Positions 22,539 through 60,808 of a stretch of 64,000 nucleotides of DNA are shown piece by piece. The notes beneath the pieces were generated by a model, which saw only the letters and a list, made by a program, of their open reading frames with translations, made no database searches and was not told the origin of the DNA. The DNA is from Styela clava (Eukaryota): NCBI RefSeq assembly GCF_964204865.1, contig NC_135253.1, forward strand, positions 14,508,001 through 14,572,000, read 5' to 3'. Every line of letters begins with the position of its first letter. Within the stretch, counting starts at the first letter, position 1. The position numbers and the translations under genes are program-made.

Positions 22539-25500
22539 TCACTTTGCCTTATTCAATGCCACACTTCCTGTGTCGCACATTTCTTCAAAGTAATAACTTG
22601 ATGCTCGATCTTTACTTCTCCGAATGAAAATCCAATGGGAAAATGAAATAATGAGATAAAAGACATTTACAACGATATTTGCTGTAAGATAGGCAATCAA
22701 ATCTGTCTTCCTATTTATAGTACAAACCATACACTTCTCTTCGTGGTAGATGACATCGCATCTGAAACAAGGGAGAAATGCTCAAAACTTGGACACGAAA
22801 CTTACACATTGGTACCAACGCTGTAAGACTGGTATCCCAGCTGACAGAAAAAGATCTGCGAACAAGTGGAAAGCTATAAAAAGTATTTGCGCTTAAATAA
22901 AACAAATCATCTACATTTTGAGTAAGATAAATCGGGTGCTACAGAAATCGGAGCGGTTTTAAAAGTAAGAGTTATCTATCTAGTGGTTCTATTCATATTT
23001 AATTACTGGTAAATACCACCAGAAAAACAGCTATGGAGTAAGTGAATTTCATCAGTTACATCCTGAAATATTATTCATATCCTGGCCTAATACAGAAAAT
23101 TGATATTGTAGACTTTGTTGTGAACAAGCATGACATAAGAAACTATCTTCTAATGATAGAATCTTTGTAAGATTAATGCAAATACATTTGAAATCTGACA
23201 TGCACTAACCGAAAACTTCCGGAAGTCCAGCCATCCGATCCGAGCACGACAAGTAGCCAGGACGAAACAGCTAGGGACATAACCGAAACCAAAAATCCAA
23301 AAGCATGTTTCATCAAATAAGAACGAACAAGAAATATTCCGTTGAAATTTCTGTTGTTACACACGAGGCGTAAGATGCATTTCGTTTTCGATTTGCCAGT
23401 AAGCCCTTTACTAGAATCTTCTCGAGTTGTCATTGTGACTTTATACACGGATAAAATGTAGGGATGTTGTTCGAGTGAAGAGAAATTTTCAAAGCATAGC
23501 ATTGAGAACAAGTGCCGGTCCAGCATTTCGCCTAAGATTAATTTCCTCATGATACCTTGTTGCTGTTTCACCTATATATAACAAAAACGTAAGTAAAGAT
23601 AAAATGACTGTAATGGGGAAATGATGAAAATTTTACTTCCAAACACACGAAGTCAACCAAATCAAACTCTGTCTCGTGTTGTATACAGATACATTTACGA
23701 GCATAACTCACAGAAACATAATTTACTTACATTCGTCTCCGTGCCCTAATTATGTTATGTCACCTGTTGTAGCCTATATGTTATTTTGCTGGTAGGTGAA
23801 TTTTGGCATGAGATCGATCGGGTTAAATCTGCCTGTATCCAAGGAGCTTAGCAAATTTAAAGCTAATAAAGTTTCTTTCTGGCGGTGCACTCTCTCCAAT
23901 CAATACGAATAAACGAATCTTTTCCTATAACAGCGTTAAATATTCACAAATACTTACCTCGTTATCCGAGTTTATAGGAATAACACAATTGTTGTTTGAT
24001 TTGTTCGAAACATCATTTTTATCTCGTTTGTCAGTTTGTGCGTCGGCGTCGACAGGCGTGTCACCGTCGGCGGGCTTTTCATCGTTGTCGTTCTCAACCT
24101 TCGTGTGAGGTATATTGTGACTTTCTTGAACGCTGGTTGCACTTTTAACAGGTTCAACAGAACTTTTTAGCTCGTCACGTTTGTATTCAGGTCTATACTT
24201 CACCCAACCATCAAGAAAATAACTTTCAGAGTCATATGCGGAATTTCTGAAATAATTGTAACAAGGAAATAACACATTTTATGAGGAAATACTTATGTGC
24301 ATCACATAATAATAAGATGGCGCACAACCTGAACTCAGGTTGTGTACCCGGTTAGGGTTCAGGTTATGCGACATCTTGGTGCGCATACTTCAGGAGTTCC
24401 CAGATAATTTGTTTTTCTCTGAATTTTTTAGAATCTCAGCAATACTCCGTCCTAATTTACGTTTTCGTTTCGTGACGAATATTAGCGACAATGTTCAAGC
24501 CCTCTATTGGTACAGATAGATCATCAAAAAAATATTATAGAGGTTAATACAAATACCCTTGATACACTCCTTTTTCTTTCGGTTTCACTGCATTATAAAT
24601 GTCATCAAGCAAAAGTTTCATAAACTTTAAATGACCCATTAATCTTGCACCAACTCGAAAATGCCACCACACAGATGGAAGAGCAAATAGAAAAGCCTGT
24701 AAATAGAATAAAATGATTACATTCTTTGGTAAATAGAAGTGCTTGATTGTATTGCGAGGTTACTTTCTTAATGTTAATAAAACTGCAAGTCTAATTAAAC
24801 AACATTTAAAATCAACGAACAAGTATTTAAATCCGAATAACTTTGATTCCTTCTAACAGCTTATGATAACAACAGCTCAATAATTCGGTCGAAGCGGGTG
24901 CCTTCTCAAACTGATAAAGAAGTGTGCTTAGATTAGAGTATATAACAGAGGTGGGCAAGGTATTTGAACCAGGGGCCAAAAATTTTGCCCACTTAGACTG
25001 TCGGGCCAATATAGTGTGACGTAAAGAGTTACATTTTTGAACAATATTTACAGTGTTACAAAAGTAAAATTCTTTGAGCTGTCAAAATTTGGTTTCAGTT
25101 TGGTTGTGGCAGCATAAGGCGGGCCAGATTGAATAACCCAACTGGTCGAATTTGGTCCGCGGGCAGTGCTTTGCCCATGTCTGGTATGTAATATATTTCC
25201 ATAGTACATGTTCTAAATCATTTTTGACAAACGTTTTGAACATTTTACCTCAAATAACATTCCATAGGGCATCCATTGCAAGAATGATTTAAAAAATGAC
25301 GGATTTTGGAGCAAATTTTTCTCATTAAGATCGTTATGTTGTAAATTACAACTGGTTACAATGCTTGGAGTATTCATTTCATTAGTCGAAGAAACAGCGA
25401 ATGACTCCCAACAGAAACTCTTCGCATAAGCAATGAAACTGACATCAACTGTTATGTTTGACGCTGGGTAACACGAAAGTTTATCGCCTGCAAGATAATG

Positions 25501-25975
25501 AACTTTTTCAGTGGCAGTTAGCCCGTGTAGAATTTCAAGTTCTCTAGATCAGCTTTATCGATATTTTACGCCATAATACCACGCAAGTATCAATGTATGC
25601 GTAATGAAATATCTCAAAATAATAACAATTCATAATAAAACGAAACAAAAATATGAATTTCATATTATTATACAAACTATTCGTTGTGAGTTTAGGTTTT
25701 CTTGTACCGTTGATCTATAATACACATTTTTGAGTTTTTTTTTTAATTATTTCTTACTTTTATCATTTTAATCATCAAAATTTTAAATAAATCGAACTTA
25801 TCCACAGGAATATACCTACGACTTCCGAAAGCTTTGAAAGTATGGCCAGTAGTATAACTACATAAACTCCAATATAATGCAGTATTCGATCTGATCCAAG
25901 TTCGATGACAATTTCTTTTTCATGCTTCTGAGACGCCTGTTCCAGACCTTTTGTAGCTTCGTAAGGGTTAGACAT
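22539..25975 (-). CDS. Pannexin/innexin-like channel D (6 exons, ~470 aa)
   Basis: Exons 25975-25816, 25487-25249, 24696-24557, 24246-23958, 23571-23210 and 22761-22539; GT-AG, frame continuous over 1413 nt. Motifs IELGSDRILHYIGVY, KLSCYP...FCWES, WMPYGMLFEAFLFALPSVWWHFRVGARLMGHLKFMK and FRCDVIYHEEKCMVC. Confidence 0.9.
24315..24400. mobile_element. Partial palindromic MITE (same family as 3268 and 55460) in intron 3 of gene D
   Basis: Near-identical to 3292-3377. Confidence 0.75.
24946..25183. mobile_element. hAT-type MITE in intron 2 of gene D
   Basis: TIRs CAGAGGTGGGCAA / TTGCCCATGTCTG; TSD GTATATAA/GTATGTAA. The core CCAGGGGCCAAAAATTTTGCCCACTTAGACTG is shared with 58250-58510. Confidence 0.8.
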
Positions 25976-27476
25976 GATAAACTTTACTTGAATGCAAAAT
26001 AACAAATCGCCTAAGTTTCGATTTATATTTCTTTTAAGAAGAATGAGAACCAGAATACCGGATCAGGCAATAGCTTGATCTAAGATTTTTTTGTCACTTC
26101 AGAGGAGGTGGTTCTATACTCATACTCTACACTGCTCAAAGTTCTCGGTTGGTGTATTTCATTTCCAGTTGGCCAATCGTAATCCTTCAATATTTATGTT
26201 ATAAACGTTTGTATAAACGATCTTCTGCCCACTTTGCTACTTTTATTATTCCGGAAATACAGTGCCGATGATTCAATCCTCTCCTACTTGCACAATCATT
26301 AAGATTATTCCCAGACTTGTGCCATGTCTATATTTACCAAGAACACTCTTAATGAAAACCGTGTGTTCATACTTGATCGTGGATATATTAAAAATTGACT
26401 ACTGGAGTCAATGAATAATTCAGAAACCAATGTGTCATGGAAGCATTCGATCGAATGCCCAAGACGAAAGAGAATAGCAACGAAGAAGTAAAGAAAGTGT
26501 AAAATACATTAGTTCCTCGTTACATGTTATGTAGATCTTAAGTAATACATATATTCTTTAACCTCATACAAGATTTCTGATTTACTTTATTTTTAAATAC
26601 TTTTATAAAATTTTCTTTTATTCGAGCTCATGCACCCTATATCATTATACATACAAGGCCTCTCCTAATAGACAAGAACGAAGCCCGTTCAAAAGCAATG
26701 TCATGATTGGATTATAACGTGAATTCATTTGCAATATTTAACATGAGACCATTAATTATGTTGCGAAAAGAAAAAATAAATTGACAAATAATGGTCTCCT
26801 TTCGAAGTACTGGCATAATTTAAAGATCCAAACTTAGCAAACGGAGTTACATGTTTACGACAGACTTTTAGTCTGTGGTGAGAATAACTAAACTTAAAAG
26901 TCGTTCCAAGCAGATGAAAAAGCAAAATGAATGATACATTTTAAAACTTTAGCAATGAATTGATATCATACAAATAAAATATTTTTCGTTGTTTTGTAAA
27001 GAGTTGCAATCGAACTCGGAAATTTGCAAACTTTCAACTTCGATTCAGAAGGATAACTTTGAAAGATTAAAAAGAAAAGGTTTGATGGACATAAAATGGC
27101 TCCTTGTGTAACACTACAGTCTCGTTACCGTTTGAGGTTTTAAATATTTCATAATAAAGTTTGAAGTCACGTTCGAGCAATAATCAACCTAACATTGCAT
27201 TATTTTTTTTGTTTAAATCTTAAAATTGCCTCAGTTTGCTTAATATCTATACATTCTGTGTATTTGATTTTCATATGACAATCTTACAATCATTTTATCT
27301 CTTAATAACAGTCGTAAAATATACCACAACCATTAAACCATTCTTGTTAAAAACAAATGTAATTTAGCTTAAAGCGCAATGTAAAATTATAAGGAATGCC
27401 ATCTATTTTAAGTTATATAAAACAGATTTTTCTAGCAGTATTTCACAAAAAAAAAATACAATTTAACAAAGTCATT

Positions 27477-29361
27477 TTAGAGAAGAGATACGACAAATGT
27501 TACATCATCTGTACCGTTTACCACGGCATCCATTACTTTAGCTGAAGTGACTTCTTCCTCTTTCTTTTCGCCGGATCTAAATTTTATTGCATACAAAGCA
27601 CGATCTTGTGTGTATTCGTCTGGAAGCGTCCAACCCGGATCAGTGATACCTAAATGGCATTAGACAATTCCGTGTAATTAATGTAAATTTTTGTAACTAC
27701 ATTTTCACGCACTCAATGGTTTTCAAGAATCATGTCAGAATGTTTATGAAATCCTGCTTAAATTTTTTAGTATTTATATTTTTTTCGACGATAAACGAGA
27801 AACTATTTTTGCACAGAAGCATGTTGATGAATATTATTTGAACTTTGTTATTTATCTAGATTCTAAAATCATTCTGATAGAACGAATTGTTTTCTATCCA
27901 CAAAAAAAAAAAAATTAAATTGAAAAATATCGATGATGATAAACTTAATTTAGTAAATTGAATCAGTTTTATGCATTAAAATTTCTTTCACAATTACACA
28001 GTCTTGTCTGAGCAGGGTCACTCTCTCTGGACAAGCAAATTCTCAAATTATTGCCAAGCGTTTTTTTGCAGATAGCCTAGCCCTAGATGAGAAATTGCTA
28101 TCGCACTGTCGAGACAAGATTTGAGTAAAAATTGAAAGCAACTAATGGTTAATATAACAATAAAGTGGAAAAATTGAAGTTTGAATCAAAAGTAGATTTG
28201 GAATATCAGGAAAATCAATTTAAAATTTATATAAAATCCTCTCGATGTTATTTTATTGAATGTCATGGATATTTACTGAAATCTGAACGTTATATTTTGA
28301 AATAAATTACATACAATTCTCTTCCATAGGAATAATCTATGTGAATACTGGTAATGAATATTCAACATACTTTTGACCAACTCCATGTTCCAACCTTTGT
28401 TCTCAGCCGGGCAGATTTTATAAAGTCTATAGATTCTGTCCGAAAGATTTTCAGTTTGCAGACAATCGGCCAATGCATCATCGGGAAGCTTGATTTTCTT
28501 GTTATCCTTGTTTATCACTATAGGCATGAATTACGGAACCGTAGTTAATATTTGACTTTATGCCGTAAAAAAAGAAATCAGTTGTCTCATGAAAAATTGT
28601 CTGGGTCGAAGAATTCCAAACAGATGCTCACATCAAATATTGGTTCATGATCGCCACCAAGAGGCGGTATGCTAAACAGTTTGGATTTATACAAAACAAC
28701 AGCGTTAAACAACTTTTTTATTTAACAAACTTTTCATCAGACATGAGGTGGAACTTATTGTTGCAGTTTTGTTATCACTTGTCTGAGTAACTACTGGATA
28801 AATATCAAATTTTCAATAAATTTTATTTTAATACTTATTCCAGTCTCACGTGACTTAACTTTTCATCCTTTTTGATGATTTGTTTTGATTCATGGGAACA
28901 CTAGGTTGACTTTCAACTTTTGCGTCCATATATTAAAGCATTACAGTTTAAAGTAAAAAATAACCGAAATTACTGTCAATCAAAACTAGTTTCGACAGCT
29001 CTTTCTCTCATAGCAAATATGGCGAACTTTGTTCGAGTAAGTTACAAAAATACAGCCGAACTAAGTTAATAACAGCCAAGGTTTCATAACTAATTCAAAT
29101 ACAACTCCAATTATAAAAGCTAAAAGATTTCTTCAAAAGCATTGCTATCAAACTCATTCTTCAATTACTAAATTCTTCTTCAAATGTAGTTGAAACAAAA
29201 TAAAACCAAGATGACAGACCGACATTATCAATAAAGCTATTAACTGACAAAGGCAGTATTTATTTTGGTTCTTTTTAGGTTTTTTACTTCACACTATTCT
29301 ACTTATATATGTTATTAAGTCTAAAAGCGTTTTAATTACAATACTCACCAAAGAAATCCAT
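27477..29361 (-). CDS. Uncharacterised small protein X1 (3 exons, 110 aa), paralog of X2
   Basis: Exons 29361-29349 (ATGGATTTCTTTG|GTGAGT), 28517-28371 and 27649-27477; phase-1 GT-AG introns; 333 nt open. MDFFVINKDNKKIKLPDDALADCLQTENLSDRIYRLYKICPAENKGWNMELVKSITDPGWTLPDEYTQDRALYAIKFRSGEKKEEEVTSAKVMDAVVNGTDDVTFVVSLL. Same exon structure as X2 and about one-third identity to it. Confidence 0.82.
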
Positions 29362-32300
29362 GTTCTTTTTTAATGAACGCTGCTGTTGAACTAATTAAAA
29401 TGTAGCCTACTATCTGTCAGTTACACACATTATGCTATACTCATGCAAAATGAAAACTTATATACTCGAGAAAAAAAGGATTAAGAATCAAGATCATACT
29501 AAAAACAGGAAGAGGATATTATTTCAGGCTATAATAATAATCACTGCCATAAGCTGCCTCAGTCTTCAGTTTCTAAGTTAGTTTTGTATTATTTGTAAGT
29601 AGACCGAGAATTATAAGACTTCTGAGCGTGGTCCTCCTGTTCGGGGGTCTAAATCTAAAAATATTTATGACATATAAACGAAAATGTATTTAATTAATTC
29701 CTGAAGTACAGATTTACAAACTAGAACAACTTAATTTTAGGAGTATTTATATCTTTAGAAGTATCCGTTATCTGTTTTTCATAAGTGGTGATCAACGCTT
29801 TATTAACTAAAAATTTAAATACTTTTTACAACTGGCATTCAGCCTGTCTAGTCGTGTATATAATAATAGACATTAACTACTATATCTAAGCCAAAAACCT
29901 CACGATACCATACTAGTTTTTCGCAATTCAGTGAGGGATTTGAAATCATAAATATGGATGGAAATATGAGAGGAAACTGCAACCTTTTTCAGTCGTAGGA
30001 AATTGAGACTGAATTGGTTATCTCATATTTTATCAGATACAAAGATTACGTTTACAGTAAAACTTTTAAATTATATATTCATAAGACTTATATATGCACG
30101 CAATCTGTAAAGATTATCTATCCCTTTCTTTTTGCCCACTAATGGCAGACTGACTTTTTATAAAATGATATGAAATAAAATTTCGATGTCCTAAATGAGA
30201 AATCAACACAAATTAAATTAGGATCTTCGTAGCATGTTACAAAATAATAAGTAAAACTAAAGTATTTTCCAAAGATTTTACCAAACTTATCAACACCAGT
30301 CGCGTAAAATATAATCTTATTCCTGTAACTAGCGAAATATCAGAATGAAATTGACGTTAAAAAGGGTTACAAAAATGAGGCGTATTCAGTTAAATGTTGT
30401 AAGCGCATGAAAGCTACCGCCAGTTTTTTTAAATACAATCATACTTAACAGAAATTTGTTAGACTTACATTACAGATACACTTGCAACTGGAACAAAAAA
30501 CTCGCATTTTAAAACAAAAATCTCATTAACGCAACACTTCAATTTACAACGACCAGTATGTTTGCAATACATTGCATATGCCCATCGACATCTTCCCTAG
30601 AGGCCAAATTATTTTCACATTTAGCTCATACTTCGGACTAATGATCGTTAAGCTTCGTCTTGAACAGAAAATTGGTAGCGCACTAGAGTTAGCAATGGGG
30701 ATGAATTTATGATTCGGTTTTCCTCACCGTGTTTAAGCGCAGCAACAGTTGGAAATCCACCACACTGCGCACAACTGGATGGAACGAGAACAATTCCTCT
30801 GGTCAAAAAAGGATGATTGACTATTAAAAAATTGCATTTTTGGTTCGTCTCCTCAGCTCTACATTTTCATATGATTCAATTCATATTAGACCGCGTATAT
30901 AAATCATCCTATGTATTTTGTACACGAATACCAGATTTTATTATTCTTCAGCAATTCTATTGTCGTTGTATCTTTTATCTCAATACGCGACAGCCTGCCT
31001 ACTAACCAAGTTTCAATAAATTCTAGTCTAGGTTAACCAGTGATGAATGAATCGCATTGTAAGTCAATAATAATACCAATGATCGACCCTATTATACCTG
31101 TTATGGTTGAGCGATGAGCGAGATGCTTGGATAGTTCACGTTAACAAAATATCATGAAAAATACACGTTAGTTTGAGAACATCTCCTATGCTGTTTCGTT
31201 GTTCGTTCGTTTCGTTCTCGTTGTAAAAACGCTGTAAAGTGTGTTTACTTTTATTAAGAAAAATATCGTACAGCAACCATGATCAAATTGTAAATATCAT
31301 TCTTATATACAACGCAAGCGATGACGCCTCACAGGCAGAAACGCTCACATAATGTATTGTCGGCCTTTGGGGTATATGGCCAATGAATTTCATCCTTCAT
31401 TACCAAGCTTACCTTGAGTTCAAATCAAAAACAACTAGAATCTACTTCTTTAACGAAGTCCAACACGGTCTAAGGTAATCTTCCTCCAAAAATATTGAGC
31501 TCCATGTATAAAAACATTACTTTCAAGAACTGTACTTGTATTTTATGACAAGTTCGGGTCGTATATGCGAGAAGATAACTATTTAAATGAAAGTGGCTGA
31601 CGGTGGAGGCAACCGCCCGGCGGTTTGGTGAAGAGCTCTTGTTACGTATACCATCTTGCGCTACAAAGTTGCTAACGGCAGTCTTCCAAAATATTCATTC
31701 ACAGACACATTATTCAGCAAGCCAATAATAGAAATTCAAAATGCTTGTATTATACTGTTTAACGGGACGATATCTTATCATGTTCTTCGTAAATAAGAAA
31801 ATCGATTTTTCAATGACAACAAAGCAACCAGGTAATTATTAATCCTACACGAATATAATTTTGTCTTACAGGCTTTCGTTTGGATAAAAAATCGATAGTG
31901 ATGAACAGGCGGTGTAAATAGAGAGGATTACCCATTCTCCATGAATAACTTTAAAATTATTCAAGATATAGGTACAAATTTCAACAGTCCATCATATTTA
32001 TGTTTAGATAGTTATTCGTGGCAGATGCTTGTTTGTGAGCATGTTACGGAAAAGTCCTTATTATATGGCGATTCATCATTTTAGAATTAGAGAAAGATAG
32101 TTATCTTACCTCATATTGCATTAAAATCATACTAAATTTAGTGAGATTTTATATTAATTAAATATCATTAGATCACCACAAAAGTTGGGTGGAATTAGGG
32201 ATGCCGAAGCTCAGTTCAGTTTGGATAAGTAATACGAACAATTGAAAAGAATCAAAGTATTATATTAGGGATATTTTTTACAAGGCCTCACCCCCATAAA

Positions 32301-33060
32301 AAACAGCCAACCCTCAAAATATGAAAATTAGTAATTATTAATTTAGGTTTTAGGTTAGGGCTAGGAATGCAGAGATTACTTCTTGACTGTGCGGCGTGAA
32401 ATTCAACAACAACCATCTAATTAACAATTAGGTAATGCGGCATATTGTGATATATAAGGTAGTTCAGTTATCGCTTGCTGTTGAGTTTGTAGCTGATGAG
32501 TTTCGAAACCATATTTTATCACAGACACCACTCAATAAGTCAATATTAAGTAAGCCAATCACCAGCATTAATTGTGTTGTATTGGGAAATGTTCAAACTG
32601 TTTATACTTTATAGAGTTACGTTTGAATTTTAATCATTTATCCGTAATTGTACCGGATATATTTACCATACTAGCAAGCTTCCTCCAAATAGAAGTACGG
32701 ATACGAATGCGCATAGAATAGGTATTACTGGTACATTTTTATGAATGATTTTGCCGGATCAAACCCCTTTCACTCTACTCGGTTACTACATTTTTTTGAG
32801 AAAACTTCTAACGAGTTTTGCATAACGATCAGCTGTGGTTACACAAATACATTTCTCTAACTAACTTAATTTGACCTGACTTCTATATACAGTCATATTT
32901 TTGACAAAAAAGCAATGGTATCACGTAAATAACGGAGATCACATTGGTGAATTTGTTTTTATACGTTTGTGTTATATTGCGCATCAGGACTCTTGGATCA
33001 CAAACAATCTTTCTTGTTATTTATTTTTATGAAAATATTTCCTGAAATATTAGTTATTTC

Positions 33061-33420
33061 CAGGCTTGTCCATGAGACATATTTTTCTGTCCTATTCCCA
33101 TCCCATGGCAATTCTGCCTGTCCCACCCCATCGCATTCCCATCCCAGGCTTAGCGTCTACTAAAATAGGACTACATGTACGAATAGACATGCATAACAAC
33201 AAAATTTACGGACTTTTTATTTAACTTTATATTCATAAATATTATACGTGTGCTGAATATTTTTGAATATATTTTGCTCTTTATAACTAACAAGAGAGCT
33301 AGGCTCAAATATATGGACACGAGTTCCATAACGAAATGTTTTACCATCATTTCCCCGAAAATCATTCGTGTCCCATGGGAAATACAAATGTATGCTGACC
33401 CATCCCATTGGACAAGCCTG
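33061..33420. mobile_element. hAT-type MITE, TIR CAGGCTTGTCCA
   Basis: TIRs CAGGCTTGTCCA / TGGACAAGCCTG; perfect 8-bp TSD GTTATTTC; ATCCC subterminal repeats; second copy at 42390-42837. Confidence 0.9.
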
Positions 33421-36400
33421 GTTATTTCTGTATAATTCAGCGTTAAGTATGAGGCCCTATATACCACTCGTTTGCATTATTGGACACGTAGTGGACATAA
33501 CGATCGTTTCAATATTATGTTGTTCTTGTTGTTTGACACAGAATAACACACCTAGTGGAAATATTAAAAAACCGCTTTTCTCTTCGAATACTGGACCAAT
33601 TGCTTTGAAATTTTCAGTGGTTGAAGATAAAATTTTCCCCCAGAAGGCTATTACTTTTATTCATTTTAAATATTTCTGTTAAATAGCTCTGTGAGATTTG
33701 TTTTTGTTTGCTATGACATCATTAAACGTTCTGCGGACATCGGACGCCATTTTGTGTCCTACTGTACTGCATTGCTTGGTGTGAATATATTTGTAGACTG
33801 TGATCTGACGGTACGGTAAACCGTACTGTACTGCGAACAGACGTGTCCATATATTTGGGCGTAGCTCTCTTGTTAAATATCTAATGAACATCCACATCTT
33901 GAGATCTTTTTCACTTCGAGCATATTCGCATTCATTTCCACCTCTTTCCTTGTAGTGGACTTTTTGTTTTTGCAACATATTTTGTGTCAGTTTAATACAT
34001 ATATATACCAAATACATACCATGAAAATTCCAGATATACATATAAAATAAATGCTGGAAATTCAACTGTAACAGTTTGAGGTTTGTTACTTTGTTAACCA
34101 ATTTTGGAAATTCAACCAATCTCTATTTCAAATTTATCTGTTTAGATTGTTTGAATCTTTTATATCTAACTCGTTAATTTATCTACGTGGAAACGTAGTG
34201 ATTTCTTATTTCACGTAGGAAAATCAACTCCATGTTTTAGTCTGACTAAGTTGGCTTGTAGTAGATACTTGGGTCGAACAGTACGATCAGAAAAAGCTAC
34301 TCCAGGCGTAGCAAAGTAATACGAATAGATTAATAGTGGTTGGTATCTTTACTGTTTCTTGTCGGATGCGAACAATACCATTTGCAAAATAATTCTATAA
34401 TAGGATTTTGTGACTTTTTTTCTCGAGCGCAAGGATCTAACATTCAGATAAGAGTAAAACTCACACCCGGATAGAAAAATGTGATAAAATAGCATGGATA
34501 AATGCAGGACATACACAATTTTAGTTGTTGTCCATACTTTCCTTAACCGATAAGCTTTTCATATTTTGCATTATCTGTTTTAGATTTATTTTATAATTAG
34601 AATCTCAGTATATAGTATTGTTTGATGGCGCTTGAAAAATAAACTTTCTTTGCCATATATCGGTAGTTCGCTTCTAATCGTACTCCTTCAAGTGAGCATA
34701 TGTTTGCAACTCAACATTTCAATTATGAAGATATTTATTATTACAGCAGTAGATCGCAAGACTGTATGTTGCATCGTGGGATATCCGGCAAATTTCCATT
34801 CGTATCATATTACTTCCAAGCAATGGCGTCATTCGATTCATTGCATCCAAAATTGCATTATTGAGAACGCATTTATGACAGCATGTTCCGAAACATTACG
34901 TACCAATGTGTAATGTCAGTGCAGTAAATAGTGATTAATAAAAAAAATTCCTGAGGACTAGCAGTGTGGTCACATTCTTCTACGTATATACATATATATT
35001 ACATTTTATAGTATGTATATATGATTTATCTTACATATTATATTTTCTATACATCCATGTGGCGATGTTCGCGATAGTTCTATGTGTCCACTTTCGGCGC
35101 TGTTGTGCGATTAGTTAGCGTACCATTTGATGCTGGGAGCTATCATCTACATTCTACGTCACACAGGTATTTCTGCTTACTAAATAAGAGACAAAAAACT
35201 TTACAAGATAAAGAAAAAAGCTATTAAGTACCACCTGTAGTCCACTTCTTCTGTTGTTATTCGCTTACAAACTAACCTGCGAATGAAGTCCGCTTTTGTA
35301 GACGGCGCTCTGAGGGTTAGATGGGTAATCAGATGTTTTGCGCCGTTAGGATGCCGTTGTTGTTGCCTGGGAAATCTTATACAGCTTATATCAAGCCTAG
35401 TAAATGCTTTTGAAAGTCAATTTAAATCTTGATCAGTTTAACTCAATTAGAGTCGATTTATTTTGCGTCTTTCAAACATCGGCGAGAGAGTAAATCAATT
35501 ATGACGATATTTTTGGACCGGTAGTAAGGTTGAGGTTTTTGAAAGCTCCTATATGAGGTGATATTTTTGAAAGCGTCTATATGAGTTGATATTTTTCCTC
35601 TCAGATAATTTTTTTTGTGAAATCAAATGAGGGTGGATCGTGAGAACATAAAAAAATGAATATATTGTGCTCACATCTAAAATACATGTCCTAACTGAGA
35701 GAACGGGATACAGTAGACAGATGCCATTATTCGGACTGAATACTGTTTGAGGCTTGGATGCTGAAGCAGACAAAAATAACGTGACCTTTGCAACATCTTG
35801 GTGATGGATTAAAAATGAGAGCCATATGAAGAATTCTGACATTCTTTTTATTCCGCGGTACTAGTTCGGAATCGTTTTATGCAGTAGAAAATATGGAAAT
35901 AAAACCGCTATAAGCACCAGTGAAGGTCACCGACAAGACAGGAACTTTTTAAGCATAATGATTTCTGATACCTGAAGAGTCCGCTCAAAGGCGATTTACT
36001 GAATGCTGTGCCGAATTATATACTGTATTATATAAATCAACTATGTATTTTAACTGGGCGACTGTGTCTTCCACCTGCAACCAGGTACTCACAGCACTAT
36101 ATAGTGTTGTAAAAAACTACCAAAAATAATATTAAATTATGCGATTATTATTAATAATTGTGATATTCAGCTAGTGTAGACTCATATTATTGCATCACTG
36201 AACATGTGTTCATATTGCGTGAGCGTGATTTGACTTAAACTGTTCAGATTGATAATGAAATCAGAAAGACGCAGTGTAGACTAATAAAAACGGATGTAGA
36301 CGTCCGAGCTGTGAATATGCTATTGAGCTTGCTGCAGCGACAGAAATGTGGGCGATAAAAATCGAATCCTTGATGATCGTTTAACATTATTTGGTACTAG

Positions 36401-37049
36401 GGCCTACAAATTATACGAAGTGAATGCTAAAATAATTTTTGAAAGGAATTTAATAAAATGTTTGACCAAAGGCAGTATTATAGGTTCCATGCGAGTTTAT
36501 GAGTGTGGTATTTGTTACCAGGCGTAGATCAGTAATGCAGAGATACAAGAACATTTTCCGTACGCCGGTACGTGATAAATGAAAAAACTAAAGGGTATTC
36601 AATCTTGTTCGACATAATTCTTCTCAAAATAAACCTCCAATTTTCCCAAAATACACCTCCATTAATACCATCTATTTGATGTCTATTTTAGCAATACGCA
36701 TGTGCGTGCTCTCCTTAAATTATTCTACTCATACCTGCGATATTGCTGTCGTTTTTCAGATGAATTTTAAACAAAGTTAAAATAAATTCACATGTTAGTG
36801 GGAAGTACGTACACCCTTTCTGTGACCCTAAAATAGTCTTTATTTAGTCTGTAATTTGTTTGTTCATTTCAGTTTATTCATTGTTTGTTTGATTTTTTAA
36901 ATTGAGTTGTTAATCAACAGTTTTTGTCAAGTTTAAAAATATACTAAGATATATATTATAATTTAGATTATATTAAAATATTCTATTATCACAATCCGGA
37001 CTTGTTGAAAGGCCGTTGCCAGCCAACTCTAAATTACCACTTGGTGGAG

Positions 37050-38126
37050 ATGGAGTTCTACAGTAAGTATAAGTTTAACATAAGCAACCATCAACCTTCT
37101 ATAAAGTCCAATCATAAAGTTGCAAATTTTCAGATTATGTGTAAAACGGGACGTTGTTTTCTTAGTGATCTTTTCACCTTATCGACAATCTATCCAATTT
37201 GAGCTATCCATCAAGTTGAACAGATCTAGTCTTGTGCAACTACCACCAATATCTACATGATTTTTTCACTCATGAAAACAGATTAAGGAGATGGGAACCC
37301 ATGGAAATAACCTAAAAATATATCTTTTTATCTATAGTGGAAAACAAAAATTCTGTCCGAGTGAAGATGCCGGAAGACGAAGTAAAAGTTATAAAAATAT
37401 TAGGAAGAAACAATCTTCCCGATCGATTATTCGCACTGTACCTGATATGCCCGGAAAATGATGGGGATCAGTGGAATCAGCGTAAAACCAAAGGTAGGCT
37501 TGACTATACGATTGAATTCTTTTTTGCCGTTGCGAGATTGCCTTGTTATATTTCACGATTACAACAGTTTGAATTGTTTGCGATTTCGGTAGTAAAGCTC
37601 ATTCGATTATTGCATTTGTGCACTACCGTTATATTTTACGTTTGCCTCAGCTTATTGTGAAATTTGCATTGTTTTCTTGCTATAATGGTCTCACATATGG
37701 TCGGCAGTAGCAGTCTGAGGCGTTAAAGACAGCAAATCATATGTATATTGAAAGTATTTCACAAGTGTTTGTGATTTTTTGTTTTTACCACAAGCTATAA
37801 TGAGCTGTTATCTGTACTATAAAACAAAGAGTACGTTCTGATTGGGGTCAACTAGATTTGGACTTTCATTTATTTGTTTGTGCGTATCACTCCTGCCCAG
37901 TTTTCTGTGAATTTATTCAATTTTCCATTCTTTGGTTTCAGCTATCACTTCTAAAGACTGGGATCTTAATAAACTGACACCGGAAGAAAAAGAACAGCGA
38001 GCAAGTTACAGGGTACAATTCAAGTGTGGCGAGACTGAAGCTGATGCTACAAATGACAAAGTGAAAGGTTTCATTGTAGACACTGATCATGAGGATATGA
38101 TGTACTTCGTGATCTCGCGAAAATAA
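37050..38126 (+). CDS. Uncharacterised small protein X2 (3 exons, 117 aa), paralog of X1
   Basis: Exons 37050-37062 (ATGGAGTTCTACA|GTAAGT), 37338-37493 and 37942-38126; phase-1 GT-AG introns; 354 nt open. MEFYMENKNSVRVKMPEDEVKVIKILGRNNLPDRLFALYLICPENDGDQWNQRKTKAITSKDWDLNKLTPEEKEQRASYRVQFKCGETEADATNDKVKGFIVDTDHEDMMYFVISRK. Confidence 0.82.
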
Positions 38127-41100
38127 AGACCCTTGTTGATCAACCCATTATGCTTGTATTTCATATATAATTGTGTTAAAAACTTAGTCTTCACTTATAT
38201 CTGATTCAGACCAATGATATCGCCACTGTCCAGTAAGTGACCTTACATGGTGTCATACTGACTTCATGGCATCAAAACGTACAGTACTGCAAACTGTATT
38301 ATATTTTATTTGATTATGTTACTATTGATACTTTTTAATATTAATACGAAACCATGATGATTCTGTCTTTATAAATTGAAAAGTATTTGTATTGTTCACA
38401 ATTTAAATTTACTTCCCAATATTTCCACCATGCGTGTTCTATATTTACTGTCTTGCCTTTCACAAGACGGAACTTTCGGCGGTGTTTTTGTGAGAGCGAT
38501 TCGGCCTGACAATATTAGTACGGTCTTTTATCTTGTGTGCATTCAACCATGAAGTAGCTGATAGTTATCACAATACAATTTCGTTTTAAAGTCGTGTGAA
38601 TGTATTTGCGTTTTGAATTTGGGTAATATTATCGATAGAGAGATGTATGTGCGCAGCTTTCGTTTTGATCTTGAACTTTTTGAGATGTTTGCTGACAGTG
38701 CTTATTCTAGGCTGCTGAAATTATGTCACTATCTGCCTAAAATGTACCAGTTGTCAGGACAATTCCCCTGGGAACTCATTTGATAAATTGAAGTCGTGAA
38801 TTATGGATTGAGCGGGAACATGCGAAATGTATGCGTATCAGGAAGAAAGCGTTGTTGCCAAAGTTCCATTCGTCACTGAATCTGCCTTAATTCCTCTATT
38901 TCTAATGCAGGTGTATTGATATGACCAGTTATAGGGTAGTTATTCATTTTTACATTTGAATTTGGTCATAGAAGTTAATTAGTGCTAGCCATTTTATTAT
39001 TGAGTGAGTTTCCAAACATAGGATGTTGTTTAGACCTATGTATATAGCCAGTTTGAATAAATCACCCGTTTGAAATTCTACCTGAAGTGCATATGTATGT
39101 TACAATATTGTAAGTAGGATCTCCTATTGAAGTACGTACATTATTGCGTTTGCTCAAATCAAAGTCAGCGGGAACTCATCCTCATGCACACTGGAGTTTT
39201 AGGGATATTGTCATCGCGTTCTTTTTTATCGAGTATTTGTACCCGAATGTCAATCGTCAATGTTATTTATACTGAACCTACAAATGATGACTTTTCGGGG
39301 TCAAACAATGGTATTGCTAAATTTAGGCTTAAGAATGTTTCAATTTTTTTTATTCTCGATTATATTCCTACATACTCAACCTGCGGATACACAAATAGGA
39401 AACAGGCAAAATTTGAAGCGTCAATTATTTTCACCTATAAAACTGAAAGTTTTCTCTCGTAATTATGTCTCAATTTATGAAACCTAGATAAATGAGAACC
39501 AGCATAAATTATGTTGAGTTATATTTGGAGGGTGACTACTAACTAGTATAAAGCTTACTACACAGTGAAAATGACATTCATTCTTGGTAAATGCTACATA
39601 TGGGAGATAAACAATTTAAAATTAATATTGTCGCTAACGCAGGTACAAATGTGGCAATCAGGAAGTGAAAATACCGAATCACGACGTCAATATGGCGGAC
39701 ATCATTTATCTGGTCCAGGACATGCGTTTAAAAGCATTTCAAATGCAGATTTCAATTTATCATTTTGTTTGCATCTATATATATTCAGTCTAGACAACAC
39801 TATAAATTGCTGCGATGTTTATTGATTTTGAAAATCCCAACAGAAATACTGCAGTAGTATGGGCTGTTGTCTTTTTATGTAACAAGTAATTGAGTTTTGG
39901 TACGCTCCACTCATATTATATCGCATGTTTTTATTAGGTCTACTCTGGGAATGATATAAATGAATCTGGAACAAAAAAGAGTTTGGGTCAAGTGTGTGCC
40001 ACCGTTAAAATATAAACAACAGTAGTTACAGAATGCTGTAAAATTCAGTGTTACGTTTTCGATTATCAGTATTTGCCTTCAAGGCAAAATAAATTAAATG
40101 CGTTCTACACATAACACAGTCCATTTCTTTTTTAAACGTGTCATGTTGTAATGCCTCATCAACTCAACTGTAAAATTAGATTTATGTTATGTCAGCGTAA
40201 ACAATACAGCATTTTAGAATGCTGTGACGAGAAACCACAATTTTTATTGTTAGGCTGTAAAAAAGTATGTCGAGTAGATTTTGATAATGTGTAATCAGTT
40301 TCACTTGGCCCATGCGTCAATGCGTCATTTTATCAATGGCGCAGACCTAATATTGTTTGATTTGACCGATGTTATGAACTGTTTCGCTGAATAAGAACCT
40401 ATTTGTTATTAGATCAAACTTTGCCACAGGCATTTGCACAGAAGCAATGAACCGTGCGTGTGATGCAGCCAAGTCAATCAACCAAGACAAATACTTCACG
40501 ATAACCTTTTTAGACAACAACAGTTTGAAATCCCTATGCAGGGCCTAACGTATGAAAAATCCTATCAAAGAGTTACGTGGGTAATTTTTAATGTGTTCCA
40601 ATTCGTACGCCGTATAATGGTTTATGAGCCTTGTATCAATTTGCAACAGGAACATACATTATATTACAATTTGCTGCATTACTGAGTTCAAGCGAAATAA
40701 GCATTCACAATTTCACACACATTCTGTTGGGAATGAGCTATACATGAATGTGGCTATCAAGCCCTTTTCGAAACACTGTATATTCTAATTCTCATGCAAA
40801 CATTCCTCCATCATGTCGCTAACTTTTTTTCAAAGATTTACGTTACGTTGAGTGATATATATACGTTTGGTATTGTGCAAATTGATGGTGATGCGCGACC
40901 ATTGCATTAGCTCTGACTGATACGTGTTAAACTTTTTATGCCAAACTCTCCCGTTGACGGCTAACACGGAAATGTATGTTCCAGCAGAGGTGTGTGTTAA
41001 CGTGGTACGATCGTGATTGCTTTTATTTACTACTAGGAAATAGTAATGATGTGGCACTGGCTGGAAATACGCTAGTGGTATAATTAGGAGATAGGTCGAT

Positions 41101-41234
41101 ATAGATAGAACTATACTATGTCCATTCTTTAATAGCAACTTTATGATTATCAGATTAACTATTATTTATTGTAATCTACACGAATGGTGTGATATCAAAA
41201 ACTACCATCACCATTAACTGAGTTGTTGGGGACA

Positions 41235-44200
41235 ATGGCGAGCGCTTCTGAAGTTGCCCAAGGACTTGAAAATGCTTCTCAGAAACAAGAAAAAGAAATT
41301 GTAATCGAACTCGGATCAGATCGAATTTTGCATTACATCGGCGTTTATCTTGTACTATTTCTCGCTGTAGTATCTAAGTTATCAGAGGCCATTGGTAGGT
41401 GAATGTATGAACATTTTGAGTATGATATTTTAAAACGTTTCTAATAAACTCTGTATCTTTCAGCCATATTACTTGACCTATATTATACAGCTTTGCGCAG
41501 TTGTTTATTGTGGACTGTGTTGTCCCTTTGTTTCACAATGCCAGAACGAGTTCCCCTTACTTTTGTTTGAAGTAAACTATGCTTGATAAAACAATATTCA
41601 TTTCATTCTGAAAGGTCCCAATTTATCATGTTACCCTGCTGGGAATGTAACTGTGGAATCAGATTTCATTTCGTACGCAACATCATATTGTTGGGAATCA
41701 TCGAATGTGTCATTGTCAGAAACCAACAGCAACGGCAACAACAACGCTTGTAATGTGGATACAAACATTTCTTCAGAAAATCTTTTAAAACATCCATCAT
41801 ATCTAAAGACATTTCTCCAATGGATGCCTTATGGGATGATAATCGAAGTAGGTGTAGATTTCGCCGCTCTTGGAACTGTTAATTGTTAAAATGTTCCCTG
41901 TTTGGTTAGTTACCCCTTTCAATGCATAGAAATGAATAACTTTAAAAATATATCAGAAAAGAAGACTCAAATTTACGCGTAATGACTCACATAAACTGTT
42001 TTCTTTCAGAAAAAGAAACAGCTTTCGATGAAAAAAACATAAATATATGAAATCGGCTAACTACGTATACTTCAGAAATCTTACTGAAAAATATGCTCCA
42101 TTTTAATCTTTCTTAAATCATATAGTAGATAGAAATAAATCATAGGGAATAACTCACCCAATTGGATATTATGAAGATTCTATGCATTAAATAAATCATA
42201 AAACATATTCTAAATTGTGAAATTTTTCTCAGGCTTTTTTTTTTGCGTTGCCGTCTGTTTGGTGGCATTTCCGTGTCGGTGCTAGATTGATGGGACATTT
42301 GAAATTCATGAAAATATTGATAGACGATGTCTATGAAGTTGTGAAGACAAAAAAACGAGGAACATATCGCAAGTAAGTAATATTATTTACAGGCTTGTCC
42401 ATGGGACAAATTTTTCTGTCCAATTCCAATCCCTTAGCAATTATGCCTGTTCTATCCCATCTCATGAGATTCCCATTGGAAGAAAATTCAATAAAAAATT
42501 TTAAATCCAGGTTTAGCGTCTACTAAGTAAGGCTACATGTACGAAGGGACATGCAAAACAACAAAGTTTACGGTCTTTGTTAACTTTATATTCATAACTA
42601 TCATACATGTGCCCATCAGCCCCTTCACGAAGTATATTGTTAATGCTGAATATGTTTTGCTCTTTATGACTAACAAGAGATCTATGCTCAAATATATGGA
42701 CACGAAGTCCATCACGAAATGTTTTACCATCATTTCCCCAAAAATCATACGGTTTTCGTGTCCCACGTATGCCATGGGATATACAAATGTGTGCTGTCCC
42801 ATCCCATCCCATGAGACGTTTCCCATGGACAAGCTTGATTATTTAAAATTATGCAGGTTTATAATAATTACTTCATAAAGATACACTCGCATTATTGTGT
42901 TCTTGAGGCTCTATCAAAATGTTTGATAATAAAATACAGTATTTCGTGGCTCATTTCTAATTAGACTGCACAGAAATCTATCAATTATTACTTTGTTTGC
43001 AGTGCAATACTCGCAAGTTTTTTTTTCACAAACTCCTTCGTGGCTTTTCTTCGCCAATGACACAAAATTTTTCTCATAAATCCACCCAACAAATATCACA
43101 CTTTTACTATTTGTCATGGCATTCTCTTTAGAGGTTCAACCTATGACAGTCGGAGCTATTATTTGGATGGATGGAGCAGCTATGATCCACAATACAAACG
43201 ACAAGGATTAGACTCAGATACTGAATCTGAATCATCGGATCCAGAAGATTCGAATCCTTCTCCAAACACTGCAACAGGAATCAGACAAAGGAATGGAAGA
43301 AATGTCAATTCTGACAGTGCAGAAGACGCACCGCTCGATTCATCAAAAAAAGCTGCTGGTCAGTTAGAAGAAGTCTCAAGTCATGCTAATCCCTCAGCTT
43401 CAAGGATACAGCAACGCAAAAATACACAGAAGGTCAAAACGAAGAAGGTAGAAGTATGCGGGTTTCAAATAGAACTATAATAATTTTTAGGTGCTATAAT
43501 CTTTTTGATTCATTCCTTATTTATTGAAAATCAAACTTCAGCATTATCACTGTACTGAAACTAGTAATTGATATATCATAACAATTTTAATTTCTCAGAA
43601 AAGCATGGAGGACAGCTGGTACGTTCGATTATTTTTCGGTAACATGCGCGATAGAAATTTATTTTCTATGCTTTGCTTCGAAAATTTTGCTTCACTCGAG
43701 CAATATCCTTACATCTTGTCCGTGTACAAAGTCACCGATATTGAAGAAGACAAAAAGGATAAAGATTTGATAGGACCGAAGACTCAGTGTATCCTGCGAC
43801 TTGTGTCAAATCAAAAGAACATGAGTGGTCGTTTCCTAATAAAAGCATATCTTCTCAAACATGTTTTTGGCTTCCTTGTTTCCTTATCTGTACTGGCTGT
43901 GACTGCGTGGGTTCTCGTGACAATTGGATCTGATGGATGGACTTCTGAAAGCTTCCAGTGAGTATAGAATGTAATTATTGTAGTTTAGTAGTGATTTAGG
44001 AAGCTTTACTGCCAGTACCCGTAGGATCCAAAGTAGCAATTGCTACTCAGCCATCTATTTACATTTCAGGCCGTTTTGTACTTTGTTACTTTATACGCGA
44101 TATCCAATTTGGTTGTTTAGTTGCCAATCGTTTCGATCAATCTCATACAGTGGATGAATCCTAACTTTATGTGGAAAAGTAGTGAATAAATTACTTTGAC

Positions 44201-44904
44201 CTTGGGGTACCGATCCCCATAGTTGGAAGCTTGTGGAGGTGTTGAAAAGTTTCACAGAGGGCGAAAAAATATAATAGCAAATCCTTGTCTCGGTGTCGAC
44301 TCCTAAAATTACATCCCGGTAACAACTCACAGTTCCGACAGAAACACGTATAAGTGAAATTGGTAAAGGCAACGGAAATGAAACTTGGTGCGCACTTTTC
44401 CGTGCAAATATATATTGCCATTAAAAACGAAATTCACTTGAATATAATACTATACAAAACTGTACCCTACAAAGGTTGCTAACCCCTAAAAGTACTCAAT
44501 TGCTAGAAAGCATTTTACCTTATACGGCCCATCGGGCGTCTATGCCTTCCAACCAATGGCCGATATAGTGACGTTAATTATAGCTTATTTTATATTTTGG
44601 CGTTTTTGTTGTTAAAAGTTGTTTAAATCGTAAATATGATATCTAATATTATTTTTGTTTTAGGTGTGACATCGCCTATCACGAAGACAAATGCATGATT
44701 TGTACTCTGCATCGGAAGAGAGACATGATCGCATTTCTCGTGGTTAACCTGTTAGTGAACTTCGCATATTTACTTCTCTCTGTTTCCCAATGGATATTCA
44801 TCCGAAGAAGTGAGAATCGCGCAACTTGTTATTACCTGGAAGACATACGAGATCTCGGCAGTGTTGCGTTGCACCAAAAGAAATGGAAAAAGGGAGGAAA
44901 CTGA
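41235..44904 (+). CDS. Pannexin/innexin-like channel E (6 exons, ~482-484 aa), closest paralog of D
   Basis: Exons 41235-41394, 41615-41847, 42233-42372, 43132-43453 (alternative donor 43447), 43599-43957 and 44664-44904; GT-AG, frame continuous. Motifs IELGSDRILHYIGVY, NLSCYP...YCWES, WMPYGMIIEAFFFALPSVWWHFRVGARLMGHLKFMK and FQCDIAYHEDKCMIC. Confidence 0.9.
42390..42837. mobile_element. hAT-type MITE (same family as 33061) 17 nt into intron 3 of gene E
   Basis: TIRs CAGGCTTGTCCATGGGA / TCCCATGGACAAGCTTG; perfect 8-bp TSD ATTATTTA. Confidence 0.9.
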
Positions 44905-59968: not shown

Positions 59969-60808
59969 AAGAATATTTCAACTAATACATATTCACATAA
60001 TACGATATTGCATACCTAACTGAAGCGTTTCGTGTAATGAAAAATTGCAATAACGATTGTAAACTATGTTTATTTTTGGAAAAATAGATTTCCTCCACTT
60101 AGAGCAGACACTGTGCCATGTGCTGCATTTTGAACTCCGTTGAAGAAGTTCGTTTTAAGCCTAAATTTTTTCTACATATGTGTGTTGCATCTCATTCTGA
60201 AGCCTCATATTTTACCACATAAAAGTGCCAGAAAAAAATGTTATTCTCGTTGCTGTTTATTTTTTCTAATCTAAGTGTATCAAATACTTTTAGGTTTTCA
60301 GTTATGCCTGGTTCAAATCTAGTACGGAAGCTAGTATGGAATTTATTTTTTGACCTACATATGTCTAGGTAATTTTGCCCCGTTATATCTGTAAAGCACT
60401 CGCAATTGGCGGATATGCAGATTCATTGGAATCCAATGGTAACTGCAATGTCCTAATCACTTTTATGCATATTGCTATTGTAGGATATTTGCTTAGCTTG
60501 CCTGCTAGTCACTGTTTGCTTGCTATTTATGTCGGTGGATTCGTACACCTAAAATTGTGTCACAGTCATGCATAAAGTGAATGTCCAAGAGGAACCAAAA
60601 TTCTGCTGAACTACGTGCGTAATTGCTGGAATACGCCTGCCGCCAGTCCAAGGCGGGCGTAATTATCATCATGGAGTTGTGTTTTCGGAAATGAATCAAA
60701 ACAATACTGGTCAACTGAAGCAAGACCGGATTTGTACCATATGTCACAATAAAGAAGCGATTGTACTTTTATCTTACTGTTTTAAATATATTCGATGTTG
60801 GTGACGAC

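What the first reader, a model, noticed from the sequence alone, without database searches (positions are those of the whole stretch)
22539..44904. Mirror-image two-gene module: unknown small protein plus channel, duplicated as an inversion
Seen in sequence: the order is D(-), X1(-), then X2(+), E(+). D and E are each other's closest paralogs, sharing EKEIVIELGSDRILHYIGVY, LPSVWWHFRVGARLMGHLKFMK, YDS.SY.LDGW..Y.P.YKR and GSDGWTS.SF. X1 and X2 are paralogs, and each lies directly upstream of its channel on the same strand. I could see no non-coding similarity between the arms, so the event looks old, yet all four reading frames remain open. Inference: the X-channel pair was duplicated as a unit and retained, compatible with co-regulation or with X being a channel partner. 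Passive co-duplication is the null hypothesis.
Basis: partly seen in the sequence, partly recalled or inferred. Interest (0 to 1): 0.8.

Follow-up and report, generated by a model that had tools for sequence, protein, structure and literature searches.

The report
Mirrored orphan-gene plus pannexin-like pair
In the sea squirt Styela clava, an old inverted duplication copied a tightly packed pair of genes, a small protein with no known relatives followed by a pannexin-like channel; the layout is real but it is an ordinary kind of gene-cluster evolution, and any working link between the two proteins is untested.

Summary
D(-) and E(+) are sister paralogs: 62% amino-acid identity against 36-44% to the other paralogs, with 100% bootstrap. 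X1(-) and X2(+) are true paralogs at about 40% identity, with z = 15.8 and 8.0 against shuffles. They share an identical three-coding-exon structure, including a 13-nt first coding exon. The order is mirrored and no non-coding similarity is left.

The organism is Styela clava. X2 is annotated by NCBI as an uncharacterized protein; X1 appears unannotated as a protein. X occurs only at this locus and in a second, ~97% identical and partly decayed copy of it 100 kb upstream. A profile search of 1.84 billion proteins found no credible relative.

Three RNA data sets show X1 expressed and spliced as modelled. In one run the X1 mRNA contig ends 49 nt before the D mRNA contig begins, which is operon-like packing.

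Synonymous sites are saturated in both pairs while pN stays low (0.245 for D-E, 0.40 for X1-X2). The event is therefore old and both genes are constrained.

Duplication as a unit is well supported. Co-transcription is plausible but not shown. A physical X-channel partnership is untested. The channel's pannexin identity rests on weak single-exon matches.

The scan noted the X family and the cluster before (s1-813361, s1-813327, s1-817493).

The parts
22539..26316 (-). Gene D, a pannexin/innexin-like 4-TM channel. CDS runs from the ATG at 25975 to the stop at 22541-22539. Exon 1 is >=26316..25816 and exon 2 is 25487..25248; both are RNA-supported. Further coding exons lie at about 24705-24559, 24251-24141, 23544-23209 and 22769-22539; these limits come from alignment matches and are approximate.
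   Evidence: tblastx/tblastn. RNA splice joint 25486/25815, seen only in RNA runs, and a D mRNA contig reaching 26316. Stop codon. Hydrophobic segments in exons 1, 5 and 6. Exon 3 matches Pannexin-1 residues 116-153 at E=0.012.
26366..30147 (-). Gene X1, an orphan soluble protein of about 110 aa. The 5' exon is ..30147-29349, of which only 29361-29349 (ATGGATTTCTTTG) is coding. Exon 2 is 28517-28371. The last exon is 27649 to about 26366, with the stop TAA at 27479-27477 followed by a 3'UTR of about 1.1 kb.
   Evidence: Joints 28517/29349 and 27645(+4)/28367, with GT..AG ends on the minus strand, in three RNA-like runs of three studies and absent from the DNA-like run; a 2233-nt contig in run X4. 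Sequence. Homology to X2.
30148..35129 (.). Axis of the mirror image: about 5 kb between the divergent 5' ends of X1 and X2. It holds repeat-derived ORFs and no arm-to-arm similarity apart from one 34-nt inverted match (33288-33321 / 33875-33842).
35130..38126 (+). Gene X2 (NCBI LOC120326241, uncharacterized protein, 157-aa model; the 116-aa form starts at MEFY). Upstream exon 35130-35168. An exon ending at 37062 carries the 13-nt coding start at 37050-37062. Exon 37338-37493. Last coding exon 37942-38126 (stop 38124-38126). The 3'UTR end is unknown.
   Evidence: P0001 is 100% identical to the window exons. Sequence.
38127..41234 (+). X2-E spacer, 3.1 kb.
   Evidence: AATAAA at 39056 and 40088
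41235..44904 (+). Gene E, the sister paralog of D. Coding exons lie at about 41235-41396, 41608-41850, 42224-42370, 43127-43237, 43626-43958 and 44656-44904 (stop 44902-44904).
   Evidence: Exon 2 matches Pfam Innexin PF00876 positions 42-97 at E=0.026.

Best explanation
An ancestral, tightly packed two-gene unit was copied once, long ago, by an inverted segmental duplication. The unit was a small soluble lineage-restricted protein gene (X) followed on the same strand by a pannexin/innexin-like channel gene of the D/E subtype. The duplication gave D<-X1 | X2->E.

Shown: the four genes pair up as sisters, the order is mirrored, X exists nowhere else in the genome, both pairs are saturated at synonymous sites yet conserved at the protein level, and X1 and D are both transcribed and correctly spliced.

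Inferred: the pair travels and persists together because it is effectively one expression unit. The X1 mRNA runs through a ~1.1-kb 3'UTR to within about 50 nt of where the D mRNA begins. Either D is made from read-through or polycistronic RNA in the tunicate operon manner, or its promoter sits in the end of X1. In either case the channel cannot easily be moved without X.

What the X protein does is unknown. The likeliest role is a co-expressed accessory or regulatory factor of the same cells; a direct channel subunit is possible but unsupported.
For: - D-E are sisters: 62% identity against <=44% to other paralogs; bootstrap 100%.
- X1-X2 homology: z = 15.8 and 8.0. Both share the 13 nt + ~150 nt + ~175 nt coding-exon structure and the same intron phases, confirmed by RNA joints for X1.
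- X is restricted to this locus and its recent copy. It is absent near A, B, C and the contig-9 paralog.
- Divergence: D-E pS 0.79 and pN 0.245; X1-X2 pS 0.83 and pN 0.40.
- RNA: spliced X1 and D contigs in three studies. In run X4 the X1 contig ends at 26366 and the D contig begins at 26316. Contigs bridge that gap in runs X1 and X7. Contig depths of X1 versus D move together across the runs: 21.8/11.7, 147/57, 155/65.
- In the second genomic copy, D' and X1' are both broken while X2' and E' are both intact.
Against: - Contigs cannot prove that single molecules span both genes.
- The bridging contigs lie on a 1.1-kb segment (25906-27010) that is tandemly repeated in the second copy, and all runs break at 25906-25935. 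The bridge may therefore come from another place.
- No spliced-leader sequence was seen at the D 5' end.
- Classic Ciona operons have no intercistronic DNA (PMC1488885). The match here holds only if UTR ends are counted.
- The X2-E arm was not examined with RNA, and its spacer is twice as long.
- Recent E copies (E'' and the 4.82-kb tandem units) were duplicated without X2, so the channel can be copied alone.
- X evolves fast and is highly polymorphic, almost all changes being nonsynonymous. That fits weak constraint.
Confidence: 0.55

Rival explanations
1. Passive co-duplication. X and the channel are unrelated neighbours that were caught in the same inverted segmental duplication. Each copy is kept, or decays, for its own reasons. 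The abutting transcripts only reflect a compact genome and some read-through.
For: The cluster is a hotbed of segmental and tandem duplication in mixed orientations. E-type genes were recently copied without X. X evolves about twice as fast as the channel. No interaction or shared-regulation data exist. The bridging RNA is ambiguous.
Against: Both members of both pairs stayed intact while synonymous sites saturated. X survives nowhere except beside D and E. The mRNA ends are only ~50 nt apart on the tested arm. D' and X1' are broken together in the second copy.
Confidence: 0.3
2. X is not an independent protein gene. It is a set of 5' leader exons of the channel gene carrying a long upstream ORF. 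The 'module' is then one bicistronic gene, and the X peptide, if made at all, mainly tunes translation of the channel.
For: X1 is absent from the protein collection although it is expressed. That would fit an annotation as UTR or non-coding RNA. RNA coverage is continuous from the X1 last exon to D exon 1 in two runs. X has no relatives and no confident fold.
Against: X1-X2 pN (0.40) is half of pS (0.83), and the conserved MDFF/MEFY start lies in a 13-nt exon; both argue for selection on the peptide. Indels between alleles and copies are in frame. In run X4 the X1 and D contigs are separate and differ 2.6-fold in depth. NCBI models X2 as its own gene.
Confidence: 0.1
3. X1 and X2 arrived next to D and E independently, by transposition or two separate duplications.
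For: None specific. The intervening DNA does contain repeats.
Against: It needs two independent insertions at equivalent positions and orientations beside the two sister channels only. X is not repeated elsewhere in the genome.
Confidence: 0.03

Closest known systems
Pannexin/innexin large-pore channel family (Pfam PF00876; Pannexin-1 structures such as 6WBF, 6M02)
   Same: D and E have hydrophobic segments placed as TM1, TM3 and TM4, with a TM2 split by an intron. They have invariant cysteines in both predicted outer loops. Two consecutive exons give weak, position-consistent matches to consecutive parts of the family: Innexin profile 42-97 and PANX1 116-153. Tunicates are reported to have pannexins (PMC6391747).
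   Different: No exon reaches the family cut-off. The Innexin profile run over the genome does not pick up this locus. Full-length models could not be scanned here. The outer loop 2 has four cysteines, and the family is expanded locally.
Tunicate spliced-leader-resolved operons (Ciona intestinalis, PMC1488885)
   Same: Two co-oriented genes, with the upstream mRNA 3' end and the downstream mRNA 5' end less than 100 nt apart in one RNA data set. Possible unresolved precursor RNA across the junction.
   Different: No spliced leader was seen on D. The distance from coding sequence to coding sequence is 1.5-3.1 kb because of a long 3'UTR. The second arm is untested. Operon genes in Ciona are usually conserved housekeeping-type genes, not an orphan plus a channel.
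Inverted segmental duplications in tandem gene-family clusters
   Same: A head-to-head mirror image of a multi-gene block, with decay of non-coding similarity and retention of the coding exons.
   Different: Nothing unusual, except that the block pairs a lineage-restricted gene with one subtype of a channel family.

Membership tests
Pannexin/innexin family (PF00876) | Match to the family profile above the curated cut-off (25 bits) | tested here: inconclusive
   Only exon-by-exon scans were allowed. The best is E exon 2 at 14.1 bits, E=0.026, profile positions 42-97. D exons gave none. A genome scan with PF00876 gave no hit at the locus.
Pannexin/innexin family (PF00876) | Similarity to solved pannexin at the TM2 region | tested here: inconclusive
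   D exon 3 against more than 20 Pannexin-1 chains, residues 116-153: E=0.012-0.09. E exon 3: E=0.41. The four-paralog profile: E=0.19. Exons 1, 2, 5 and 6 gave no hit.
Pannexin/innexin family (PF00876) | Four transmembrane segments | tested here: met
   The Kyte-Doolittle 19-residue window exceeds 1.6 in exons 1, 5 and 6. The fourth segment (WMPYGMLFEV|YLQAFLFALPSVWW) is split by an intron, so it scores below threshold in each exon alone.
Pannexin/innexin family (PF00876) | Conserved cysteines in both extracellular loops | tested here: met
   Invariant C8, C28 and C49 in loop 1 across six paralogs. Invariant C4 and C16 in loop 2.
Tunicate SL-resolved operon | Same orientation, with upstream and downstream mRNAs less than 100 nt apart | tested here: inconclusive
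   In run X4 the contig ends are at 26366 and 26316, 49 nt apart. Contig ends are not mapped RNA ends. The second arm was not tested.
Tunicate SL-resolved operon | Downstream mRNA carries the spliced leader | tested here: inconclusive
   No extra letters at the 5' end of the D contig, and no loose end listed near 26316. Contigs are a poor test, and 40 loose ends were not shown.
Tunicate SL-resolved operon | Unresolved dicistronic RNA exists | tested here: inconclusive
   Contigs 25906-26533 (run X1) and 25906-26985 (run X7) bridge the junction. They lie on a segment that is tandemly repeated in the second copy.
Inverted duplication of a two-gene unit | Both gene pairs are reciprocal closest relatives, in mirrored order and orientation | tested here: met
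Inverted duplication of a two-gene unit | Equal age of the two pairs | tested here: inconclusive
   pS is 0.79 for D-E and 0.83 for X1-X2. Both are saturated, so they are compatible with equal age but not discriminating.
PLAT/LH2 domain (PF01477), as a lead for X | Match to the family profile | tested here: not met
   Atlas look-alikes score only 0.85, which is below the lead threshold. A Pfam scan of P0001 and P0002 at E<=10 shows no PLAT.
   The AlphaFold2 model from 4 sequences has mean pLDDT 43. The Atlas model has pLDDT 0.33. No fold search was justified.

The most novel reading that the evidence does not exclude
X is a dedicated accessory subunit or regulator of the D/E subtype of pannexin-like channels. 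It is made from the same operon-like transcription unit, so that channel and partner are produced in fixed proportion. That would be a lineage-born auxiliary protein for a large-pore channel family, a family for which few dedicated partners are known to me.
Probability: 0.12. Interest if true: 0.7.

Novelty: new member of a known kind. Interest (0 to 1): 0.35.

Why it matters
The locus is a clean natural case of a lineage-restricted gene kept beside one subtype of a large-pore channel through an old duplication, in a chordate that uses operons. If the two are co-transcribed or interact, it would be a handle on how pannexin-type channels are regulated and on how new genes become tied to old ones. 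If not, it is simply a well-documented example of block duplication in a fast-turnover gene cluster. It also yields one expressed gene (X1) that appears to be missing from the protein annotation.

Tried and rejected
- Pfam on single exons of D, E and the other paralogs gave only one weak Innexin hit.
- The PF00876 genome scan gave nothing at the locus.
- PDB searches with exons 1, 2, 5 and 6 and their profiles gave nothing.
- Word search for X1 found no candidate.
- Word search with the longest D open frame found nothing, because full-length channels are outside the length window.
- The profile search of 1.84 billion proteins with X returned only X2 itself plus bacterial repeat proteins (DUF7507/DUF11, RTX, PepSY, fn3). 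These have 4-7 weak stretches each, and I take them as spurious.
- The structure prediction of X2 was too poor to search with.
- The Atlas PLAT lead was not borne out by Pfam.
- X is not a fragment of the channel and not a repeat.
- A weak X-like match upstream of B (15809-15762, E>1) was not recovered by the X profile and is dropped.
The pooled identity, distance and dN/dS figures were computed from separately aligned exons.
Full report
**What is there.** The window is intron-bearing eukaryotic DNA with about 35% G+C. A word search with the X2 exon returned a 100% identical NCBI protein, 'uncharacterized protein LOC120326241 [Styela clava]' (P0001, 157 aa). A 116-aa sister record (P0002) comes from another place on the same 25.4-Mb contig. 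The window is G000:C4:14508001-14572000 of a 377-Mb assembly.

**The channel cluster.** tblastn with the D exons finds five paralogs in the window:
- A(-), exons 1-2 only, 8050-7516
- B(-), 14908-11698
- C(+), 16614-21266
- D(-), 25975-22539
- E(+), 41235-44904

A sixth paralog, F, lies on contig 9. The finding's end coordinates are exactly the stop codons of D and E.

**Observation check, channels.** Every other pair is 36-44%, except A-B at 73% over exons 1-2. Neighbour joining with 500 column resamplings gives D+E 100%. So D and E are sisters.

**Observation check, X.** With the splice sites read from the sequence, each X has three coding exons.
- The first is a 13-nt exon: X1 is ATGGATTTCTTTG|gt at 29361-29349, and X2 is ATGGAGTTCTACA|gt at 37050-37062.
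- The second is about 150 nt: 28517-28371 in X1 and 37338-37493 in X2.
- The last coding exon is 27649-27477 in X1 and 37942-38126 in X2.

Both introns are in phase 1 in both genes. Identity is 42% and 38% in the two larger exons. Smith-Waterman scores are 90 and 62 against shuffle means of 22-23, with 0 of 2000 shuffles reaching them, and cross-exon controls are at chance. X has no hydrophobic segment and no similarity to the channel. Outside coding exons the arms share nothing but chance-level matches.

**RNA evidence.** One read-laying run was allowed, and I spent it on 24900-30899, which covers the D 5' end and X1. Three RNA-like runs from three studies carry joints that the DNA-like run lacks, all with GT..AG ends on the minus strand:
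- 25486/25815, D intron 1
- 27645(+4)/28367, the X1 intron
- 28517/29349, the X1 upstream intron

This proves that X1 is transcribed and spliced exactly as modelled. It also shows that the CTATAG|TG acceptor is used, so the ATG at 28527 is intronic.

The expressed X1 allele differs from the reference by Q>K, A>P, V>A, S>H and one extra in-frame codon.

In run X4 the X1 mRNA contig (2233 nt) covers 30147-29349, 28517-28367 and 27645-26366. The D mRNA contig (2635 nt) starts at 26316. The ends are 49 nt apart, with depths of 147 and 57. In runs X1 and X7, contigs 25906-26533 and 25906-26985 bridge this gap and overlap their neighbours by k-1 letters.

There is a caveat. The segment 25906-27010 is tandemly repeated in the second copy of the locus, and all runs, DNA included, break at 25906-25935. 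Several RNA variants also match second-copy bases. The bridging RNA therefore cannot be assigned with certainty, and contigs never prove single molecules.

**Distribution of X.** Six-frame searches of the whole genome with X exons find only X1, X2 and their counterparts in the second copy. A profile of X run without filters over 254 kb finds nothing else; that stretch comprised the window, 130 kb upstream, 20 kb downstream and 40 kb around F. A, B, C and F therefore have no X.

A profile search of 1.84 billion representative proteins returns X2 itself and six long bacterial repeat proteins. I regard those as spurious multi-stretch matches. Pfam, PDB and the Atlas give nothing usable. The AlphaFold2 model has pLDDT 43.

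X1 is absent from the protein collection in the 46-147 aa range. It appears to be unannotated as a protein.

**Age and constraint.** Nei-Gojobori counts, summed over separately aligned exons, give for D-E pS 0.79 and pN 0.245, and for X1-X2 pS 0.83 and pN 0.40. Both pairs are saturated at silent sites, which is compatible with one old event. Both keep pN far below saturation, so both proteins have been under purifying selection. X is changing about twice as fast as the channel.

**Second copy.** Window 7290-47774 has a ~97% identical, rearranged copy at C4:14404748-14489001. In that copy:
- D' exon 2 is split by a 2.19-kb insertion that resembles window 60808-61855.
- The last coding exon of X1' is deleted.
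- X2' (= P0002) and the adjacent E' are intact.
- There is an extra E-like gene carrying only 238 nt of E's 5' flank.
- There are five 4.82-kb partial E units.

The deletion junction was not seen in the one DNA run laid. Whether this copy is a paralogous duplication or the other haplotype is open.

This copy cuts both ways for the hypothesis. D' and X1' are lost together, but E-type genes can be copied without X.

**Channel identity.** Only exon-level tests were possible.
- D exon 3 hits more than 20 Pannexin-1 chains at residues 116-153, with E from 0.012.
- E exon 2 hits Pfam Innexin positions 42-97 at E=0.026.
- These two exons are consecutive and match consecutive parts of the family.
- The topology and loop cysteines fit.
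- The PF00876 genome scan and the other exons gave nothing.

I take 'pannexin/innexin-like' as likely, about 85%, but not proven here.

**Interpretation.** One inverted duplication of an X-channel block is by far the most economical history. [quoted passage not shown] That criterion is met only when UTR ends are counted, and the decisive features (spliced leader, spanning molecules) were not shown. Passive co-duplication remains a serious rival. A physical X-channel partnership is pure conjecture at this point.

**Verdict.** This is an ordinary kind of event involving an orphan gene, of modest interest.

Noticed in passing
G000:C4:14404748-14489001 (loci L024-L033), matching window 7290-47774: A second, ~97% identical but rearranged copy of the whole cluster lies about 100 kb upstream. 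It has an extra E-like gene with only 238 nt of 5' flank, five 4.82-kb tandem partial E units, and five 1.1-kb tandem units of window 25906-27010. It could be a recent segmental duplication or an uncollapsed haplotype.
   Followed up: partly
L026 (C4:14423779-14425964) and the counterpart of window 27293-27722: In the second copy, D' exon 2 is interrupted by a 2.19-kb insertion (87% like window 60808-61855) and X1' lacks its last coding exon. X2' and E' are intact. The deletion junction was not seen in the one DNA run laid.
   Followed up: partly
window 22542-25975 versus its second copy; window 37944-38123 versus P0002: Coding differences between the two copies are almost all nonsynonymous: D/D' 11 to 0, and X2/X2' 5 to 0 plus a one-codon indel. 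E, B and C show mixed changes. The excess is marginal statistically (about 0.07 for D alone).
   Followed up: partly
window 26366-30147 (-): X1 is expressed and spliced in three RNA data sets but is absent from the protein collection. It is probably missing from the public protein annotation.
   Followed up: partly
window 4471-6138 (+): Two long ORFs look like a retrotransposon integrase region, next to the truncated paralog A (only exons 1-2 found, 8050-7516).
   Followed up: no
window 33171-33467 and 42533-42832; 33288-33321 / 33875-33842: A repeated element with similar ORFs sits both in the X1-X2 spacer and in an E intron. There is also a 34-nt inverted match in the spacer. Probably transposon remains.
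   Followed up: no
G000:C9:13750768-13753204 (L036-L037): A compact sixth paralog (F) of the channel family sits on another contig, with no X-like sequence within about 18 kb on either side.
   Followed up: yes
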